A DNA stretch of 63,275 nt, filler included, from Octopus bimaculoides (GCF_001194135.2; 5 parts of 5 records of this genome joined end to end with filler, not necessarily neighbours in it); one strand, 5' to 3'. Shown: positions 7,556-31,054, counted from the first letter of the whole stretch. Made by a program: numbers and translations. The notes: generated by a model not told the origin, from the letters alone.

Positions 7556-8125
7556 NNNNNNNNNNNNNNNNNNNNNNNNNNNNNNNNNNNNNNNNNNNNN
7601 NNNNNNNNNNNNNNNNNNNNNNNNNNNNNNNNNNNNNNNNNNNNNNNNNNNNNNNNNNNNNNNNNNNNNNNNNNNNNNNNNNNNNNNNNNNNNNNNNNNN
7701 NNNNNNNNNNNNNNNNNNNNNNNNNNNNNNNNNNNNNNNNNNNNNNNNNNNNNNNNNNNNNNNNNNNNNNNNNNNNNNNNNNNNNNNNNNNNNNNNNNNN
7801 NNNNNNNNNNNNNNNNNNNNNNNNNNNNNNNNNNNNNNNNNNNNNNNNNNNNNNNNNNNNNNNNNNNNNNNNNNNNNNNNNNNNNNNNNNNNNNNNNNNN
7901 NNNNNNNNNNNNNNNNNNNNNNNNNNNNNNNNNNNNNNNNNNNNNNNNNNNNNNNNNNNNNNNNNNNNNNNNNNNNNNNNNNNNNNNNNNNNNNNNNNNN
8001 NNNNNNNNNNNNNNNNNNNNNNNNNNNNNNNNNNNNNNNNNNNNNNNNNNNNNNNNNNNNNNNNNNNNNNNNNNNNNNNNNNNNNNNNNNNNNNNNNNNN
8101 NNNNNNNNNNNNNNNNNNNNNNNNN

Positions 8126-10939: not shown

Positions 10940-11512
10940 TGATCCAACCAAGCTCTCAATTCTGCATCAGTATTGAACGAAACTCCGCGCATAGCATTTG
11001 AAAGAGATCAAAGGAGATGGAAATCCGTTGGTGCCAAATCAGGAGAGTACGACAGGTGTGGCACTACTTCTCAGCCATGCGTTTGAATGGCTTCCTTGGT
11101 CATATTGGCGATATGAGGGCAGGCGTTGTCGTGCAGTAGAAGAACGCCATGCTGCCGATAAGGTCTTTTCTCTTGAATAACCGTGTTGAGTCGTTCCATC
11201 TGTTGAATGTAGAGTTCCGCATTGACTGTTTGGTTCCGTTCAAGTAATTCGTAATGGATAATCCCTTCCCAGTCCCACCGTACGCACAACATCGTTTTAC
11301 GCGGATGAAGATCTTGTTTCACGCGCGGTGTCGCTTGTTTACCGGGGCTAAGTCATTCCTTACGCTGCTTCATATTGATGTACAGGCACCGTTTTTCGTC
11401 GCCAGTAACGATTCGGTAAAGAAATCGTTGCTTGTGTCCATGAGTTGAGCGGTGACGAGCAAGCAAACCAGCGCAGATTGTGGCTCGTTGATTTTTGTTG
11501 TTGTCACTTAAA
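10940..11512 (-). pseudogene. mariner (DD34D) transposase, 3' half, with stops
   Basis: WVPHAL, IVTGDEK, LLHDNACPH, YSPDLAPTDFHL motifs; several in-frame TGA. Confidence 0.92.
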
Positions 11513-15632: not shown

Positions 15633-16393
15633 ATGTATACCCACATATATGTACATACTTACATCTACATGTGTATATAGATGCATATCAGGGTACAGGA
15701 CGTTGGAAAAATGAACTACAGTGAAAACAACATTAAAAATCCGTACGGCCAAACGCGAATCTGGTATTGAACGCTAGTGATAGGACGAAGCTGGACAGAG
15801 AAAAGACAGTTCGTCTCGCCTATCTACCTATCTATCTTTCTTCTTACCCATCTCCCCCTCTCGCTCTGCTTCCTCCTGTTGTCCTGGCTTCTACTTTACT
15901 GCTATACACGTCTCTCTCTTCCTCCTTGTTTCACTTCCTCCCTCTACCATCTTCTCTGCTCACGTGTGAGCTGTGGTCAACTCTCTCTTATCACTCCTGC
16001 CACTATGAAGGCGAAACGAACTGTCTTTTCTCTGTCCAGCTTCGTCCTATCACTAGCGTTCAATACCAGATTCGCGTTTGGCCGTACGGCTTTTTAATGT
16101 TGTTTTCACTGTACATTTTTTCCTGCCTTGGTTTGTGTTTGCCACCTTGGAATCCTCTGTTTAGTGGGTCGATCCACTACTCAGGAAGAGACTATTCTAG
16201 AGTACGTTCTGCCTTATCTTCGAAACGTCCAGTTAGAATAGAGACAGCTGACGAAGGATTAATTCCAAGTGGCTATCTGTTTTCCTATGTGCTCGTTCCG
16301 TTGTCTGTAGTTCATTTTCCCAACGTCCTGTACCCTGATATGCATCTATATACACATGTAGATATAAGTATGTACATATATGTAGGTATACAT
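15633..16393. repeat. long inverted repeat, probable PLE pseudo-LTR pair
   Basis: 15633-15820 is the reverse complement of 16010-16113 joined to 16310-16393. Confidence 0.8.
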
Positions 16394-17665: not shown

Positions 17666-18075
17666 AGGCGCAGGAGTGGCTGTGTGGTAAGTAGTTTGTT
17701 TACCAACCACATGGTTCCGGGTTCAGTTCCACTGCGTGGCACCTTGGGCAAGTGTCTTCTACTATAGCCTCGGGCCGACCAAAGCCTTGTGAGTAGATTT
17801 GGTAGACGGAAACTGAAAGAAGCCCGTCGTATATATGTATATATATATGTATGTGTGTTTGTGTGTCTGTATCTGTCACCCCACCATCGCTTGATAACCG
17901 ATGCTGGTGTGTTTACGTCCCCGTAACTTAGCAGTTAGGCAAAAGAGACCGATAGAATAAGTACTTGGCTTCCAAAGAATAAGTCCTGGGGTCGATTTGC
18001 TCGACTAAAGGCGGTGCTCCAGCATGGCCGCAGTCAAATGACTGAAACAAGTAAAAGAGTAAAAGAGTAAAAGAG
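17666..18075 (+). mobile_element. SINE-A, full length
   Basis: tRNA-like A/B boxes, CACCTTGGGCAAGT CORE-like segment, internal microsatellite, (GTAAAAGA)n tail; about 20 related pieces in the window. Confidence 0.92.
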
Positions 18076-18325
18076 ATCAACCGATGGAAAGGAACAAAAA
18101 TGATTATGTTCAATATAAAGTTAATAGGAACAGAATTTATGTGATATAATCAAATATGGAATGACAGTTGGGTGAAAACTGTGTGTGTCTATGGAGTAAG
18201 TTTAATATACAAATGATTTTAGGAATTATTCCAGCGGTTTCTTTCAACGATTTATGAAATAAACCCTTAAATATAAAAATTAAGGTGTTTCGTTGATAAC
18301 GGTTATCGTTAATGAAAACTTTATT

Positions 18326-19256: not shown

Positions 19257-19654
19257 ACTGTATGGCTTATATATGTAATATAAATTTATTATTGAGTATA
19301 AGTAACCTATTATTAATGGAATAAAAAATCAAATGTATATGTTGAAAAAAATCTATTTTTGAACAAAGTAACGTTCGAGTTAGTACTGACCGCGGCACAG
19401 TAAACTAAATTTATTGGCCTTACAATTTCCTTCAAGTAGACTATTGTCGGTGCTGATATAATTAAATGCATTTTCATAAGGAGGCTGAGTTTTTAATTTC
19501 AGTAGATTAAAGTTGGCCAATATCTGCGCAAAACTATAGCTGGCTGAATTGACATTTTAATAATTGTATCCATTGAGGAAATTCTGGCAATTGTAATTGA
19601 GAGGGAAACATTAGTAGGGAGGATTGAAAAAAATTACTATTGTAAATGCATTTC

Positions 19655-19934
19655 AGTTCTGTATTTAAGAGATGAGGAATTATGTACATTATTTACATTA
19701 TTTCCATTTGACGGATATTTGTCCTCATCTTGTTTGTTCTTAACACAAGTTTTGGCTGATATACCCTCCAGCTTTCATTAGGTGTCTTGGAGGAAATTTC
19801 GAACCTGGGTTCTCAATCCTAAGGTACTTTTTGATGTTATTATTATTATTATTATTATTATTTAGGTCACTGCCTGGAATCGAACTCGGAATCTTGGGGT
19901 TAGTAGCCTACGCTCTTAACCATTACGCCATATG
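19655..19934 (-). mobile_element. SINE-D: tRNA-like head + (AAT)n + hammerhead-bearing tail
   Basis: Head TGGCGTAATGG...GAGTTCGATTCC; colinear with 39030-39312; hammerhead core degenerate in this copy (CTAATGA, CAAAAC). Confidence 0.85.
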
Positions 19935-20022
19935 AAGGCTGGAGGGTATATCAGCCGAAACGTTGTGTTAACAACAAGCAAGATGAGGACAAATATCCGT
20001 CAAATGTAAATAATGTAAATAA
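19932..20022 (+). repeat. inverted partial copy of the SINE-D tail
   Basis: ATGAAGGCTGGAGGGTATATCAGCCGAAACGTTGTGTT...CAAATGTAAATAATGTAA is the reverse complement of about 19685-19780. Confidence 0.9.
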
Positions 20023-20510
20023 AGCAAATACATTTGTTTAACATGCTGAATAACTAATAAGAGAAAGAATATATCTTCAGCTTTGTTTATTAATAACACT
20101 AAACGTTTCTGATATACACAACGTACGATTTGTTGTATGCATGTTATGCCTGTGAATTAAGAAATAATGAAGTTATCAAAAGATGAGAGCTGAAATATTT
20201 CAAATAAATTCGGACATAGTTACAAGCTACAACAGATATAATTTCTGAGAAAACGAAAATTGAGGGATGAAAAAGGCTTCCCGCCGCAATAAGAAAAGTT
20301 CCTATTGAAAGCTGAATTCCAAGGTTTTTATATATCCATCAAAATGTTCTTAGAATCTACCATGAATTCTTAAGGTGCAACAATTAAACTTTTCTTTTTG
20401 TTTGTCACCGTCCACCACAAATTGACGTCAAAGATTGGTGGCTGGAAAAATTTCAGTAAGCGTGATAATAGAGCTGAAAGATATAGCCAAAATATAATCT
20501 GGTCAATATT

Positions 20511-21583: not shown

Positions 21584-22130
21584 TCATAGTCGGTGGTGGG
21601 TTTTTAGACTAATTGGTCGAACCCAAACTAGTTCATAGTTTGTCAAGATCTCATGGTTTGGGGAATCAAGGAGATCCACGTTGAAATCACCAAGGACGAT
21701 GGTCAGATGATTCCTTGGCAAAGATCTTATAAGATGATGCAGGCTGGTGAGGAAAGGATCAACTGGTACGGAAGGAGATCTGTAAATGGTGATGATATTG
21801 ATTTTTGTTGATGAGATGGTTACCCCGACAGCGGTGTGACATTCAAATGTATATCCGTGACATTCAAATGTATATCCACTGACATTCAAATGTATATCCG
21901 TGGGGGCGATCTCCTGCTTGGCAACAGTCATCACCCCACCTCCACGCCCAAGTGCAGCAGGCCTGTCTGCTCTAGGGATCTTCGACTGCGGTAGGATGGA
22001 TGCTACTTGTTGATTCTGCTTCAAGANNNNNNNNNNNGCTTCAAGAACGTTTCCACGAAACAAAACACATCAACATTTTGAAGAGTGTTGTGCGCTTTCA
22101 AGTCTTGTTCATGTTCAAAGTAGGACCTGA
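21584..22130 (-). pseudogene. apurinic (AP) endonuclease domain of a Helentron
   Basis: NVDVFCFVETFLK, GRGGGVM, IITIYRSP, IVLGDFNVDLL motifs directly downstream of the PIF1 domain. Confidence 0.85.
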
Positions 22131-22203: not shown

Positions 22204-23225
22204 TTACTGTCGAAGCCTGTCCATTTCACGAACAACTGATGGACTAGTGCGGATTGCACTTGCATCAAATCCAAGCAAGAAGAGGCCACTCAAGTGTCGG
22301 ACACGACTCAAGGCAACATACGCCTGACCAGGCATGAAGGAACCTTTTCCTTGCATGGCAACAACAATCTTATCCATGGTCTTGCCCTGGACTTTATGTA
22401 TGGTGCAACCCCAGGTCAGTGAGAAAGGAAATTGCGAACGCTTTGCCTCCACAAATCGTCTACCCCTCCCGATATAGAACTGAACATCCAGTCGTTTGAT
22501 GGGAACTACTCCCGGGAATGACCTCTTGTACTGGCTGTCAGCGATGACCTGCTCACCCACCCGTTCACTGTCAAATTTGACGAGGATTGTATGGACGGCA
22601 CTACCAGTGTTGTCGATCCCAACAACTGTGCCACAGACGCCATTTGCCAGACCGTCAGAGACGTCTATGTTGACAGTTATCATCACTCTAGCGCTAACTG
22701 CTATAGACACTACTTCCCTGAGGCCGCCAGTGTCTGACGCCTTAGTGGAAATGGCAACATCAATAAGGCCAGTCTAGACGTCTTTCTTTTTGTCGATAGT
22801 TTTGATGTCATAAATCGGGTCAAGCAGCTTGTGGTGTTCTGTGTTGTGTTCATCAACCTCTTTGTTCGTCTTAAACACGTGACAGGCGTTCGCTGGGTAG
22901 TCAGTGTCTTCTTTGGTGATGACTCTGGTCTGAAGCAAGGTTATATTATCTTCTGTGCAGGTAGCTGTCCTGACCCTCATCAACAATTGCCAAAATGTTG
23001 ATCGTCCTTTTGTCGCATGCCCTCTGTGAGTTCCATCAATTTGAAGTTTTCCTCTCACAGAGATCCATGCAAGCGGGCGTAGTTGTCTCCCGGGAGGCCA
23101 AAGACGTGATTCTGGCCTACAGGTTGCAGTTGGTAGAGATCCCCAACGGCCATCACACTGACTCCTCCAAATCGGGAATCTGGGTCAGAGTTCTCACAGA
23201 TGTTTTGAAGCCGGCGACTACTAAG
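22204..23225 (-). pseudogene. PIF1-family SF1 helicase domain of a Helitron/Helentron RepHel
   Basis: FGGVSVMAVGDLYQLQPV, NIDVSDGLANG, RSQFPFSLTWGCTIHKVQGKT, GQAYVALSRV; frameshifted. Confidence 0.92.
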
Positions 23226-24914: not shown

Positions 24915-25270
24915 GTACCACCTTAAAACTTTGAAAGGTTTTAGTCGAACGAATCGACACCAGTGCTTATTTTTCTAAAGTATGATACTTATTCCATCGG
25001 TCTCTTTTGCCGAACTGCTAAGTTACAGGAATGTAAACAAACGTTGATTGTCAAGCGATGGCGGGGAATAGACACAAGCACAACGACAAAGATACATATA
25101 TATATATATACGGGTTTCTTTCAGTTTCCGTCAACCAAGTCCATGCACAAGGCTTTAATCAGCTCGGGGCTATAGTAGAAGACAGTTACCCAAGGTGCCA
25201 TGCAGTGGGATTGAAGCCGAAACCATGTGGTTGGGAAGCAAACTTTTTACCAGACAGCCATACCTGCGTC
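24915..25270 (-). mobile_element. SINE-A, diverged
   Basis: Colinear reverse-complement match to SINE-A. Confidence 0.8.
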
Positions 25271-25502
25271 TTATATATATATATATATATACACAAGCAG
25301 AAGGGTTATAAATTCATAGCATTAACACAATACTCTTTGCTTGTAGCGTAAGATTAGTGTATTTCTCAAAAAATTATATTTACTTTTAACACCCAATGGT
25401 TTTACACTTCTGTACATTACATGCACATATTATTCATGTAAGTGCTTCTTCATATAGCGCAGCCGTTTTCGCGTGAAAAGCGAATACACACACACAAAGG
25501 TC

Positions 25503-25534
<32 letters not shown>

Positions 25535-25538
<4 letters not shown>

Positions 25539-25886
25539 GAACGAGAATGGACCCCAACTATGCGAACCTGTTCGTTGGCTACGTTGAGGCCCAAATATTC
25601 TCACGATCCACTGGTCTCACTCCCGAATTATACGGTCGTTATATTGATGACTGTATCGGTGCGACCTCACTCTCCCTCGAACAACTTGACTCCTTCCTCT
25701 CCTTTGTCCAATCCTTCCATCTTGCCCTCGAATTCTCCTGCACTATTTCCAACACTTCCGTCGCATTTCTTGACATTTCAGTCAACACACACAACCCCGC
25801 TCTCACTACCTCCATCCACTACAAACACACCAACTCACACTCTTACCTTAACTTCTCCTTTCCACCATACCCACACTAAGCTCTCC
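25535..25886 (+). pseudogene. Penelope-like element (Penelope/Poseidon-type) RT fragment
   Basis: MGTRMDPNYANLFVG, YGRYIDDC, VAFLDI, TSIHYKHTNSHSYL are characteristic PLE RT motifs. Confidence 0.9.
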
Positions 25887-27465: not shown

Positions 27466-29575
27466 TCAAAGATTATCAAAGATTATCAAAAAAATACATA
27501 TACTATCCATACGAATATTAGCTGCTGACATTTTAAATTTGGACGCGTGTCTACATGTATTTAAAAGTTCGCGTCTTTGGTTTAGCGCCTTCTTATCCTG
27601 GAATAAGATATTCATTTTTTCCAATAAACAAAGATCACATTTCAATGGTCTTTTATGGGCACCGTGTCTGTAAGGCGATGCTTTGCCTAAAATCCTCCAT
27701 GTCACGTTGAAAGGCTGGGCTTCATTTTCCTTTAAATGCCAGACGTATTTTGCCAGGCTCGTCTTTGTCCTATTTTCAGGGTACCTAAAAAAATTTTTAT
27801 GCGAATACAGTCTGGTTTTGAAAGAATTTTCTGTAGCCCCTGTATAAGTTCTATAATCATGCGAGCCTTCTATCTGGACTTTGGCCCNNNNNNNNNNNNN
27901 NNNNNNNNNNNNNNNNNNNNNNNNNNNNNNNNNNNNNNNNNNNNNNNNNNNNNNNNNNNNNNNNNNNNNNNNNNNNNNNNNNNNNNNNNNNNNNNNNNNN
28001 NNNNNNNNNNNNNNNNNNNNNNNNNNNNNNNNNNNNNNNNNNNNNNNNNNNNNNNNNNNNNNNNNNNNNNNNNNNNNNNNNNNNNNNNNNNNNNNNNNNN
28101 NNNNNNNNNNNNNNNNNNNNNNNNNNNNNNNNNNNNNNNNNNNNNNNNNNNNNNNNNNNNNNNNNNNNNNNNNNNNNNNNNNNNNNNNNNNNNNNNNNNN
28201 NNNNNNNNNNNNNNNNNNNNNNNNNNNNNNNNNNNNNNNNNNNNNNNNNNNNNNNNNNNNNNNNNNNNNNNNNNNNNNNNNNNNNNNNNNNNNNNNNNNN
28301 NNNNNNNNNNNNNNNNNNNNNNNNNNNNNNNNNNNNNNNNNNNNNNNNNNNNNNNNNNNNNNNNNNNNNNNNNNNNNNNNNNNNNNNNNNNNNNNNNNNN
28401 NNNNNNNNNNNNNNNNNNNNNNNNNNNNNNNNNNNNNNNNNNNNNNNNNNNNNNNNNNNNNNNNNNNNNNNNNNNNNNNNNNNNNNNNNNNNNNNNNNNN
28501 NNNNNNNNNNNNNNNNNNNNNNNNNNNNNNNNNNNNNNNNNNNNNNNNNNNNNNNNNNNNNNNNNNNNNNNNNNNNNNNNNNNNNNNNNNNNNNNNNNNN
28601 NNNNNNNNNNNNNNNNNNNNNNNNNNNNNNNNNNNNNNNNNNNNNNNNNNNNNNNNNNNNNNNNNNNNNNNNNNNNNNNNNNNNNNNNNNNNNNNNNNNN
28701 NNNNNNNNNNNNNNNNNNNNNNNNNNNNNNNNNNNNNNNNNNNNNNNNNNNNNNNNNNNNNNNNNNNNNNNNNNNNNNNNNNNNNNNNNNNNNNNNNNNN
28801 NNNNNNNNNNNNNNNNNNNNNNNNNNNNNNNNNNNNNNNNNNNNNNNNNNNNNNNNNNNNNNNNNNCCTTTAAACCAATCTATAACTGACTTATTATTCT
28901 TCCAAATCCGTAAATTTAAATCACTATCTAACTTAGTTAAAATTCGGTCTAAAATGTATTTGCTAATAGTCCCAATTTCAGTCTTTGCAGGATTAATTAA
29001 TCTACATTTGGGGTTTCTATTAAAATTATCTTTATGGTCTTTTAGGGTAACAAAAGCAGGTCGGGGAGATAGGTATTCTATTCTATCGCTAATCTTAAGA
29101 TTGTTAGCTATTCTTCTTGCTTCTAAATTCACCTCTTTATATAAATTTGTGTTGTCTTTTTTGTATGTGTCAGTGATGCAATTCGAAATTAGGCGCTTGT
29201 AAACATCCTTGTCAACCGCATATAAGTTTTTAGTCTTGTCGGAATTAACGAAGATCTTGTTCGAGTTATTGATTTCTGTAATTTTTTCCTTCATATTTCT
29301 CTGTAGATGGTTCGTGTGTCTACAGAATTTAATTTTTCTAATGAGATCAAAAAGGTCTTTCTCGAAGGGTTCTAATTCCGGAATAGCTGGTGGGTTCCTG
29401 GAAGATTTGATTCCGTACTTGTTCCCGTTTGGTTTTTGTTTACTCTCAAAGAAGAAGGCTTTCCATCTTAATCTTCGAACAAACTCTTCCATTTTTCTAT
29501 AAGACTTTTGAGATATTGCTTCTGTGCAGGGATGAGTATATTTTTTTGCGAAAACTCCAATGGGTAAAGTTCCAT
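27466..29575 (-). pseudogene. Penelope-like element ORF (RT + C-terminal GIY-YIG), centre in gap
   Basis: RLRWKAFFF, DKTKNLY, TLKDHK.NF...PKCRLINPAK; after the gap YRTYTGATENSFKTRLYSH, KYVWHLK, WRILGKASPY, CDLCLLEK, LNQRRELLNTCRH. Confidence 0.9.
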
Positions 29576-30761: not shown

Positions 30762-30801
30762 ACACGCACGCACATTTGTATGTGTGAGTGTATGTGTGTG
30801 T

Positions 30802-30949
30802 GTGGCTGTGTGGTAAGAAGCTTGCTTCCCAACAACATGGTTCAGTGTTCCGTTCCACTGCGTGACAAGTTGGGAAGGTGTCTTCTACTATAGCCTCGGG
30901 CCGACCAAAGCCTTGCAAGTGGATTTGGCGGACGGAAACTGAAAGAAGC
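30802..30949 (+). mobile_element. SINE-A 5' part
   Basis: GTGGCTGTGTGGTAAGAAGCTTGCTT...GGAAACTGAAAGAAG. Confidence 0.85.
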
Positions 30950-30954
30950 TGCTT

Positions 30955-31054
30955 GTTTTAGTCATTTGACCACGGCCATGCTGGAGCACCGCCTTTAGTC
31001 GAAGAAATCGACTCCGGGCCTTATTCTTTGTAAGCCTAGTACTTATTCTATTGG
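30955..31054 (-). mobile_element. SINE-A tail
   Basis: Reverse complement of the SINE-A 3' region. Confidence 0.85.

What the first reader, a model, noticed from the sequence alone, without database searches (positions are those of the whole stretch)
19655..20022. Candidate new system: tRNA-headed SINE carrying a hammerhead ribozyme, with Penelope-type inverted pseudo-LTR
Seen: on the minus strand a Pol III-type head (A box TGGCGTAATGG, anticodon-like GG-CTACTAA-CC resembling tRNA-Ser(GCU), B box GAGTTCGATTCC) is followed by (AAT)n and a tail. The four tail copies in the window give the consensus GACAC-CTGATGA-A-GGCTG[10 nt]CAGCC-GAAAC-GTT-GTGTT. This is a type I hammerhead: helix I GACAC/GTGTT, core CUGAUGA...GAAA, 5-bp stem II, palindromic ACGU stem III. 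An inverted partial tail (19932-20022) is fused to the head through an ATG microhomology and stops 30 nt before the element's 3' end. Established: minimal type I hammerheads with a palindromic stem III are typical of PLE pseudo-LTRs, and PLE insertions often carry inverted truncated pLTRs that lack a short 3' tail extension. Inference: a non-autonomous Pol III element mobilised by PLE RT/GIY-YIG rather than by a LINE, i.e. a SINE/retrozyme hybrid. No single copy here has a fully intact ribozyme. I cannot confirm it is undescribed.
Basis: partly seen in the sequence, partly recalled or inferred. Interest (0 to 1): 0.9.

Follow-up and report, generated by a model that had tools for sequence, protein, structure and literature searches.

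The report
Octopus tRNA-SINE with Penelope-type hammerhead tail
This is a dead copy of an octopus short interspersed repeat that has a tRNA-like promoter head and a tail carrying a minimal hammerhead-ribozyme motif, and it sits in the genome as a head-to-head inverted pair, which suggests it was copied by a Penelope-like retrotransposon rather than by a LINE.

Summary
On the minus strand, 20035-19642 is one composite insertion: a 12-bp target duplication (10/12), a 93-nt inverted partial copy of the tail, a tRNA-like head, (TAA)n, a body, a mutated hammerhead-like motif, a shared tail, and a 35-nt 3' extension that the inverted arm lacks.

I found the same element in Octopus bimaculoides (locus L009). 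There it forms a full head-to-head inverted pair with an 11-bp perfect target duplication, and again only one copy has the 35-nt extension.

The majority consensus of the four copies is a perfect minimal type I hammerhead: GACAC CUGAUGA A GGCUGG[8]UCAGCC GAAAC GUU GUGUU. It shows the features published for Penelope-like-element (PLE) ribozymes. Every individual copy is mutated.

So there is a head-plus-tail SINE family, and it has a PLE-style insertion signature. Not shown: the PLE partner, Pol III transcription, self-cleavage, or stem covariation.

The "new system" label is too strong. Schistosoma SMalpha is already a SINE-like element described as apparently Pol III-transcribed that carries a hammerhead, and non-autonomous PLE derivatives are known. 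I rate it a new variant of a known kind, of moderate interest.

The parts
20024..20035 (-). Left copy of the target-site duplication, AAATGTATTTGC
   Evidence: It lies directly outside the end of the arm homology. It matches 19653-19642 at 10 of 12 positions. A match this good within the 129 nt downstream has P of about 0.013 by shuffles and 0.016 by genomic control.
19931..20023 (+). Inverted, 5'-truncated partial copy of the element's tail. Its sense strand is the plus strand. It holds the 3' part of the hammerhead motif at 19931-19969 (uAUGA A GGCUGG agggtata UCAGCC GAAAC GUU GUGUU) and lacks the 35-nt 3' extension.
   Evidence: 93.4% identity over 91 nt to 19778-19689.
19865..19932 (-). 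tRNA-like head with Pol III type-2 promoter boxes: A box 19930-19920 and B box 19886-19876. Compared with the L009 copies it lacks the first few nucleotides (GGGMAT...).
   Evidence: The only A+B-box hit in the piece, against 0.013 expected. The consensus A box TGGCGTAGTGG is a perfect match to TRGCNNAGTGG. Neither ARAGORN nor Rfam recognises it as a tRNA.
19837..19864 (-). Internal (TAA)n microsatellite between head and body
   Evidence: The L009 copies have (TAA/CAA)n at the same place.
19787..19836 (-). Body, conserved in the L009 copies; origin unknown
19742..19786 (-). Mutated minimal type I hammerhead motif: GACAC CUAAUGA A AGCUGG agggtata UCAGCC AAAAC -UU GUGUU. Relative to the consensus it carries G5A, G10.1A, G12A and loss of G16.2.
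19689..19741 (-). Tail shared by the direct and inverted copies. It ends in two AAATAATGT units.
19654..19688 (-). 35-nt 3' extension present only on the direct copy: TGTACATAATTCCTCATCTCTTAAATACAGAACTG
   Evidence: The same extension is found on L009 copy A and is absent from copy B.
19642..19653 (-). Right copy of the target-site duplication, AAATGCATTTAC
19627..19633 (-). T7 run in the flank, the first possible Pol III terminator downstream. There is no run of four or more T inside the unit.
   Evidence: The absence of TTTT inside the unit is not significant (P=0.47).

Best explanation
The locus is an old, inactive insertion of an octopus SINE family about 300 nt long.

The element has these parts, in order:
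- a tRNA-derived head with A and B boxes;
- an internal (TAA)n;
- a short body;
- a 3' module, about 130 nt long, made of a minimal type I hammerhead motif, a tail and a 35-nt terminal extension.

Inferred origin: the 3' module comes from the 3' end (pseudo-LTR region) of a Penelope-like element, and that element's RT/GIY-YIG enzyme recognises it.

Inferred integration mechanism:
1. The endonuclease nicks both target strands 11-12 bp apart.
2. Each 3'-OH primes reverse transcription of a SINE RNA. One priming starts at the true 3' end. The other starts about 35 nt in, just after the AAATAATGT repeats.
3. The two cDNAs meet head to head and are joined through a few bases of microhomology.
4. 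If the second cDNA is complete, a full inverted pair results, as at L009. If it aborts early, a short inverted arm results, as in this window.

The hammerhead has no helix III loop, only a palindromic ACGU, so it could cut only as a dimer. In the SINE it is most likely an inherited recognition or passenger module of the PLE 3' end, not something needed to process a Pol III transcript.

Shown here: the family, the anatomy, the consensus motif, the inverted architecture at two loci, and the target duplications. Inferred: Pol III transcription, PLE dependence, two-sided priming, and any ribozyme activity.
For: 1.
2. The A+B boxes are significantly non-random: 1 hit against 0.013 expected, with canonical 44-nt spacing.
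3. A second, independent locus in O. bimaculoides (CM046603.1; L009 7580-8099) holds two copies, both with head, microsatellite, body, hammerhead motif and tail, at 86-90% identity to the window copy.
4. The four-copy majority consensus is GACAC CTGATGA A GGCTGG AGGGTATA TCAGCC GAAAC GTT GTGTT. It has the full CUGANGA and GAAA cores, a G10.1-C11.1 pair, an unpaired nucleotide between A9 and G10.1, a palindromic 15.2-16.2 with no loop 3, a GUU cleavage triplet and a 5-bp helix I. These are the traits listed for metazoan PLE minimal hammerheads in PMC4209133.
5. 93% of stem cells pair in register, against 19-51% when the partners are slid. The hammerhead-competent fold is within 1.4 kcal/mol of the minimum free energy.
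6. Both loci have the same layout: target duplication, inverted copy without the extension, direct copy with the 35-nt extension, target duplication. The window duplication is 10/12 (P about 0.013). The L009 duplication is 11 perfect and 12/14 overall (control frequency 0.008).
7. This layout matches Craig et al. 2021 (PMC8557442): an inverted 5'-truncated copy adjacent to the 5' end, and a 30-40-bp tail at one end only. PMC4209133 also reports pairs of minimal hammerheads 100-700 bp apart on opposite strands.
8. The truncated arm keeps the tail-proximal part. That fits two primings from 3' ends and does not fit snap-back synthesis.
9. PLEs are present and recently active in octopus (PMC13282606). 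PLE remnants lie in this window and in L004.
Against: - No PLE, or any other autonomous element, with a matching 3' end was found. The PLE remnant in the window (27466-29492) and the one in L004 do not share the tail (the L004 alignment is marginal at P about 0.03 and is not collinear with the ribozyme).
- There are only two loci and four copies. 80 kb of other octopus DNA held none.
- There are no compensatory changes in the stems. Every copy has disabling core mutations.
- Rfam and ARAGORN recognise neither the ribozyme nor a tRNA.
- Self-cleavage at GUU would detach the head from the 3' tail, so an active ribozyme would work against propagation as a unit.
- Neither locus has a direct pseudo-LTR.
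Confidence: 0.65

Rival explanations
1. It is an ordinary LINE-mobilised tRNA-SINE. The hammerhead-like consensus is a coincidence or an irrelevant relic, and the inverted pairs arose by some process other than PLE integration.
For: The tail holds two AAATAATGT units, which resemble the short 3' repeats of CR1/L2-type partners. The 11-12-bp target duplications also fit LINE-type integration. No PLE partner was found. There is no stem covariation.
Against: Both loci found carry an inverted duplicate of the 3' end, whereas LINE twin priming (from my own knowledge) inverts part of one copy instead of duplicating the tail. The 35-nt extension is one-sided at both loci. The consensus meets every listed trait of PLE minimal hammerheads (PMC4209133). 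The repeat units are internal, not terminal, in the extension-bearing copies.
Confidence: 0.15
2. It is a non-autonomous PLE derivative whose tRNA-like segment is a captured passenger. It would be transcribed by Pol II or by read-through, so it is not a true Pol III SINE.
For: The head is not recognised as a tRNA by any tool. Its acceptor stem is not complementary in the L009 copies. Copy B of L009 lacks the B box. Non-autonomous PLEs without Pol III heads are known (PMC8557442; bioRxiv 10.64898/2026.07.22.740005).
Against: The element starts at the tRNA-like 5' end in both full L009 copies, where the junction is ...CCCATGGG.... The consensus A box is perfect and the box spacing is canonical. 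There is no run of four or more T on the sense strand in any copy, but this is not significant.
Confidence: 0.12
3. It is a nested chimera: a short tRNA-SINE ending in (TAA)n, into whose microsatellite a 5'-truncated PLE 3' fragment later inserted. Head and tail would then not form a family.
For: PLEs favour microsatellite targets (PMC8557442), and the (TAA)n sits exactly at the head/body border.
Against: The same head-microsatellite-body-tail order occurs at an unrelated locus in two more copies. The inverted arm abuts the head, not the (TAA)n. The target duplications flank the whole composite. This may describe how the family was born, but it does not describe this insertion.
Confidence: 0.04

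Closest known systems
SMalpha / Sjalpha SINE-like retroposons of Schistosoma (Ferbeyre et al. 1998; Laha et al. 2000; summarised in PMC6765202 and PMC8490949)
   Same: Both are short non-coding dispersed retroposons with Pol III promoter boxes and a type I hammerhead in one unit. In both, the link to PLE-type ribozymes has been discussed.
   Different: SMalpha carries a canonical hammerhead, and PMC6765202 reports cleavage in cis or trans from multimeric transcripts. It is often tandemly repeated, and in cleaved multimeric transcripts its promoter lies at the 3' end. The octopus element has a loop-less minimal hammerhead (ACGU helix III). It has a classical layout of 5' tRNA-like head, microsatellite, body and tail. 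It is dispersed as head-to-head inverted pairs with a one-sided 35-nt extension.
Minimal type I hammerheads of Penelope-like-element pseudo-LTRs (Cervera & de la Pena 2014, PMC4209133; Lunse et al. 2017, not readable here)
   Same: Shared traits are the core, the unpaired base after A9, the G10.1-C11.1 pair, a palindromic 15.2-16.2 with no loop 3, a short helix I, occurrence mostly as dispersed single motifs, and sometimes pairs on opposite strands 100-700 bp apart.
   Different: Here the motif is not next to a PLE ORF. It lies 3' of a tRNA-like head within a roughly 300-nt unit.
PLE insertion architecture (Craig et al. 2021, PMC8557442, Fig. 2) and non-autonomous PLEs (e.g. MRC1/Chlamys; vertebrate non-LTR retrozymes, bioRxiv 10.64898/2026.07.22.740005)
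   Same: Shared features are an inverted 5'-truncated copy at the 5' side, a 30-40-bp tail at only one end, and a target duplication of variable length.
   Different: There is no direct pseudo-LTR or tandem at either locus. The unit is SINE-sized and carries a Pol III-type head. The described non-autonomous PLEs and retrozymes are internally deleted or tandem elements, and no tRNA head is mentioned for them in the passages I read.
Classical tRNA-derived SINEs of octopus (Ohshima & Okada 1994, OK/OR1/OR2; the abundant SINE at window 17668-18078)
   Same: Both have a tRNA-like head, an internal microsatellite and a body, and both are dispersed with target duplications.
   Different: The abundant octopus SINE in this window ends in (GTAAAAGA)n, a LINE-like 3' repeat. 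It shows no hammerhead, and its two neighbouring copies lie tail to tail and 250 nt apart. I could not read the 1994 paper, so identity with OK, OR1 or OR2 is untested.

Membership tests
PLE-type minimal type I hammerhead | Conserved cores CUGANGA and GAAA | tested here: met
   Met by the four-copy majority consensus (CTGATGA ... GAAAC). L009 copy A has CTGAAGA and GAAAC. No single copy is fully intact: the window direct copy has CUAAUGA and AAAAC, and the window arm is cut inside the first box.
PLE-type minimal type I hammerhead | Helix II closed by G10.1-C11.1, with an unpaired nucleotide between A9 and G10.1 | tested here: met
   An unpaired A followed by GGCUGG/UCAGCC (6 bp) in three of four copies. 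91.7% of helix II cells are paired.
PLE-type minimal type I hammerhead | No loop 3, palindromic 15.2-16.2, NUH cleavage triplet, short open helix I | tested here: met
   GAA-ACGU-U followed by GUGUU, which pairs with GACAC (5 bp). This is present in the window arm and in L009 copy B, and it is mutated in the other two copies.
PLE-type minimal type I hammerhead | Compensatory variation in the stems within a genome's family | tested here: inconclusive
   0 of 11 pairs show a change on both sides, but there are only four copies.
PLE-type minimal type I hammerhead | Location in a PLE pseudo-LTR, or sequence match to one | tested here: inconclusive
   There is no match to the two octopus PLE 3' regions available. 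No library of octopus PLE consensus sequences was available.
PLE-type minimal type I hammerhead | Self-cleavage as a dimer | not testable with these tools
   Only folding could be done. The hammerhead-compatible fold is -11.2 kcal/mol against a minimum free energy of -12.6.
tRNA-derived SINE (SINE2) | Internal Pol III promoter: A and B boxes at tRNA spacing at the 5' end | tested here: met
   Both full L009 copies start at the tRNA-like 5' end.
tRNA-derived SINE (SINE2) | Head recognisably derived from a particular tRNA | tested here: not met
   ARAGORN and Rfam give no tRNA. A cloverleaf appears only at relaxed thresholds after I added an artificial acceptor strand. The Ser(GCU) assignment is not supported.
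tRNA-derived SINE (SINE2) | Many dispersed copies flanked by target-site duplications | tested here: inconclusive
   Two loci have target duplications. The copy number is unknown, and there were no copies in 80 kb of other octopus DNA.
tRNA-derived SINE (SINE2) | 3' tail shared with an autonomous partner | tested here: inconclusive
   No partner was found in the sequence available.
PLE-dependent (PLE-style) insertion | Inverted 5'-truncated copy adjoining the 5' end | tested here: met
   Seen at both loci: a 93-nt arm in the window and a near-full inverted copy at L009.
PLE-dependent (PLE-style) insertion | 30-40-bp extension present at one end only | tested here: met
   The same 35-nt extension is on one copy and absent from its partner at both loci. 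The partners end within 3 nt of each other.
PLE-dependent (PLE-style) insertion | Direct pseudo-LTR / partial tandem | tested here: not met
   There is no direct repeat of the element at either locus.
Non-LTR retrozyme | Tandem head-to-tail units, each with a hammerhead, giving circular RNA | tested here: not met
   There is no tandem arrangement. Circular RNA cannot be tested here.

The most novel reading that the evidence does not exclude
Octopus genomes hold a true Pol III tRNA-SINE family that is mobilised by a Penelope-like element and not by a LINE. It would integrate by reverse transcription primed from both target strands, and it would carry a dimer-dependent hammerhead inherited from the PLE 3' end. 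If so, it would be the first SINE-PLE partnership with a classical SINE layout. It could also mean that part of the many 'unclassified SINE' families of octopus depend on PLEs.
Probability: 0.3. Interest if true: 0.65.

Novelty: new variant of a known kind. Interest (0 to 1): 0.55.

Why it matters
SINEs are defined as partners of LINEs. A classical tRNA-headed SINE that uses a Penelope-like element would widen that definition.

It would also give a small, abundant natural reporter for the poorly understood PLE integration steps: the inverted copies and the one-sided 'tail'. And it would offer a testable explanation for some of the thousands of dispersed minimal hammerheads in animal genomes that are not next to any PLE ORF (PMC4209133).

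SINEs make up about 12% of the Octopus vulgaris genome, and 893 recently active families are unclassified there (PMC13282606). The partner question therefore has practical weight for cephalopod genome annotation.

The idea is not unprecedented. SMalpha in Schistosoma and the non-autonomous PLE derivatives already point the same way.

Tried and rejected
**Searches for more copies**
- Exact-pattern scans for the tail or helix II gave nothing in viral contigs. They gave one chance hit in a bacterial gene in metagenomes and one chance hit in Yersinia.
- Ten window ORFs are not in the protein collection by exact sequence.
- Sequence strings of the element occur in no held paper.
- The loci of several mariner homologues (L005, L007, L008) are not octopus.
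- Two octopus proteins were not on record. I reached their genes through longer isoforms.

**Tests on the element**
- Rfam at E up to 10 found no hammerhead or tRNA in the 20-kb piece, in the 461-nt locus, or at the L009 locus. The microRNA hits are microsatellites or the palindromic junction.
- A descriptor scan found no intact minimal hammerhead in the piece.
- The absence of TTTT in the unit as evidence for Pol III: not significant (P=0.47).
- A 9-bp stem pairing the tail with the extension: present in the consensus fold, but z=-1.6.

**Tests for a PLE partner**
- The PLE nearest to the window's PLE (L003) has only a poor hammerhead-like string.
- SINE tail against the window PLE 3' region: no similarity. 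Against the L004 PLE 3' region: marginal (P about 0.03) and not collinear.

**Mechanism rejected**
- Snap-back synthesis as the origin of the inverted arm. The arm keeps the tail end, not the head end.

Full report
**What is at the site**

Read on the minus strand, window 20035-19642 is one composite unit. Its parts, in order, are:

| Coordinates | Part |
|---|---|
| 20035-20024 | AAATGTATTTGC, left target duplication |
| 20023-19931 | 93-nt stretch that is the reverse complement of the element's own tail |
| 19932-19865 | tRNA-like head (A box TGGCGTAATGG 19930-19920; loop GG-CTACTAA-CC; B box AGTTCGATTCC 19886-19876; then CAGTGACC) |
| 19864-19837 | (TAA)n |
| 19836-19787 | 50-nt body |
| 19786-19742 | Hammerhead-like motif GACAC CTAATGA A AGCTGG AGGGTATA TCAGCC AAAAC TT GTGTT |
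| 19741-19689 | Tail ending in two AAATAATGT units |
| 19688-19654 | 35 further bases |
| 19653-19642 | AAATGCATTTAC, right target duplication |

A T7 run follows at 19633-19627.

The inverted arm is 93.4% identical to the direct tail over 91 nt. It carries the better-preserved 3' half of the motif (…ATGA A GGCTGG AGGGTATA TCAGCC GAAAC GTT GTGTT). It is cut inside the CUGAUGA box, where it meets the head with a 2-3-base overlap.

**Is it more than chance?**

- An A box plus a B box, each with at most one mismatch and 30-60 nt apart, occurs once in the 20-kb piece against 0.013 expected. The spacing is the canonical 44 nt.
- The two 12-mers that flank the composite match at 10 of 12 positions. 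With the left boundary fixed by the end of the arm homology, a match that good within the next 129 nt has a probability of about 0.013-0.016.
- Each hammerhead-like copy is weak by core sequence alone: two mismatches, and 1.67 such matches expected per window. Rfam reports no hammerhead and no tRNA even in a 461-nt search, and ARAGORN finds no tRNA.
From the window alone, the ribozyme reading could not be confirmed.

**Finding the family elsewhere**

- Pattern scans of the viral, metagenome and prokaryote collections gave only chance hits.
- A mariner remnant in the window (11353-11500) is 90% identical in protein to an Octopus bimaculoides 'SETMAR-like' protein.
- The loci fetched for octopus mariner-derived genes contain the window's other SINE families at 85-93% identity. 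The window is therefore from an Octopus genome.
- One of those loci, L009 (O. bimaculoides CM046603.1, 16.74 Mb), holds the element at 7580-8099.

**The L009 locus**

Two copies lie head to head at L009.

- Copy A, on the minus strand, has head, (TAA/CAA)n, body, CTGAAGA A GGCTGG … TTAGCC GAAAC, tail, and the same 35-nt extension (TGTACATAATTCCTCATCTCTTAAATATAGAAT).
- Copy B, on the plus strand, has a head with a B-box deletion, body, TTGAAGA A GGCTGG … TCAACC GAAAC GTT GCGTT, and tail. It stops at …GTAAATAATGT without the extension. That is within 3 nt of where the window's inverted arm stops.
- The pair is flanked by GTGTGTATGTT on both sides: 11 perfect, 12 of 14 overall, with a control frequency of 0.008.
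- The junction …CGCCATATTCCCATGGGCATATGGTG… is a near-palindrome. It places the element's 5' end at about GGGMATATGGYGTAGTGG, so the window copy lacks only a few 5' bases.

**The consensus**

Aligning the four copies gives the majority sequence GACAC CTGATGA A GGCTGG AGGGTATA TCAGCC GAAAC GTT GTGTT. The consensus A box, TGGCGTAGTGG, is a perfect match to the Pol III A-box consensus.

The motif has every trait that Cervera & de la Pena list for metazoan PLE minimal hammerheads (PMC4209133):
- the CUGANGA and GAAA cores;
- an unpaired base between A9 and G10.1;
- a G10.1-C11.1 closing pair;
- a palindromic 15.2-16.2 with no loop 3 (ACGU);
- a 4-5-bp helix I.

In register, 93% of stem cells pair, against 19-51% when the partners are slid. 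There is not one compensatory change, so four copies say nothing about selection on structure. The hammerhead-compatible fold lies 1.4 kcal/mol above the minimum free energy.

Each copy carries its own disabling changes. The window direct copy has G5A, G10.1A, G12A and loss of G16.2. L009-A has a 3-nt deletion at helix III. L009-B has C3U and two stem mismatches. This is neutral decay of dead copies that differ by 8-13%.

**How it most likely works**

Head and tail travel together. Three head-bearing copies at two loci share the same order of parts, and in each case a target duplication flanks the whole composite. The element therefore behaves as a SINE: a tRNA-like Pol III-type head, a microsatellite, a body and a 3' module.

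The integration signature is not the usual LINE one. At both loci an inverted copy of the 3' end sits at the 5' side of the main copy, and only the main copy has the terminal 35 nt. Craig et al. [quoted passage not shown] PLE target duplications vary in length.

The truncated arm keeps the tail end, so it was made by priming at a 3' end and not by snap-back. I infer reverse transcription primed from both nicked target strands, with one priming about 35 nt inside the RNA.

The ribozyme lacks a helix III loop, so it could act only as a dimer. Cutting at GUU would separate the head from the tail. In the SINE it is therefore more likely an inherited recognition or passenger part of a PLE 3' end than a processing device.

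PLEs are present in octopus and were recently active there (PMC13282606). Remnants lie in the window (29492-27466) and in L004, where two N-terminal fragments also lie head to head.

**What is not shown**

- No autonomous element shares the tail. The two octopus PLE 3' regions I could read do not match it; one alignment is marginal and not collinear.
- Pol III transcription, cleavage and copy number are untested. 80 kb of other octopus DNA held no copy.
- The parent tRNA cannot be named. A cloverleaf appears only at relaxed settings after I added an artificial acceptor strand, and the real 5' end seen in L009 does not pair with the 3' acceptor-like bases.

**Comparison with what is known**

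- The closest precedent is SMalpha/Sjalpha of Schistosoma. It is a SINE-like element that appears to be transcribed by Pol III and carries a type I hammerhead (PMC6765202, PMC8490949).
- Non-autonomous PLE relatives are also described: MRC1/Chlamys in PMC8557442, and vertebrate non-LTR retrozymes in bioRxiv 10.64898/2026.07.22.740005.
- The octopus element differs in three ways. It has a classical SINE layout. Its ribozyme is the loop-less PLE type. It occurs as dispersed inverted pairs and not as tandems.
- It is not a retrozyme by definition, because there are no tandem units.
- In the held literature I found no paper that links a tRNA-derived SINE to a PLE partner or to a hammerhead, apart from SMalpha. 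Recent octopus repeat surveys do not mention it.
- I could not check Dfam, Repbase, Ohshima & Okada 1994 or Lunse et al. 2017.

**Verdict**

A tRNA-headed SINE with a PLE-type hammerhead and a PLE-style insertion signature is well supported. PLE dependence and catalysis are inferred. 'New system' should read 'new variant of a known kind'.

Noticed in passing
window 27466-29492 (minus strand): A Penelope-like-element ORF split by an N gap. The N-terminal 210 aa is 58% identical to P0001, and there is a C-terminal GIY-YIG-like part at 27885-27526. Its 3' flank shows no hammerhead and no similarity to the SINE tail.
   Followed up: partly
window 25507-25879 (plus strand): A 5'-truncated reverse-transcriptase fragment (YIDD motif) begins directly at a (TA)n microsatellite. 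This fits the microsatellite insertion bias reported for PLEs.
   Followed up: partly
window 17668-18078 (+) and 18690-18328 (-); also 24940-25286 and 30800-31054: The abundant octopus SINE, with a tRNA-like head, internal (TA/TG)n, a body and a 3' (GTAAAAGA)n. Two copies lie tail to tail 250 nt apart. Its 3' end is LINE-like and it has no hammerhead, so it contrasts with the element under study.
   Followed up: partly
window 15633-16393: A near-perfect palindrome (arms 97-98% complementary, with a 190-nt insert in one arm) lies next to an assembly gap. It could be a foldback element or an assembly artefact.
   Followed up: no
window 11071-11500, 21584-22063, 22204-23058 (all minus strand): Remnants of a mariner transposase (90% aa identity to O. 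bimaculoides 'SETMAR-like'), a LINE AP-endonuclease, and a Helitron/Pif1-type helicase.
   Followed up: partly
L004 4909-5698 and 12545-13444 (O. bimaculoides CM046611.1): Two PLE N-terminal fragments lie head to head (5373->4909 and 5498->5698). Separately, a PLE C-terminal fragment is followed about 290 nt downstream by CTGATGAG…(52 nt)…CGAAAC ATT, and that element seems to end at a (TA)n. This may be a decayed PLE hammerhead in octopus.
   Followed up: partly
SINE consensus 3' module (window 19741-19654 and L009 copy A): AGAUGAGGA in the shared tail is complementary to UCCUCAUCU in the 35-nt extension, giving a 9-bp stem that only extension-bearing copies can form. It is in the predicted fold, but the fold is not significantly stable (z=-1.6).
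   Followed up: partly
L003 (ENA contig, 3282 bp): The closest full-length relative of the window's PLE ORF sits on a contig whose two ends repeat each other (a tandem or pseudo-LTR arrangement). It has only a poor hammerhead-like string, CTGATGATCGATGACGTGAAAC, about 110 nt before the ORF.
   Followed up: partly
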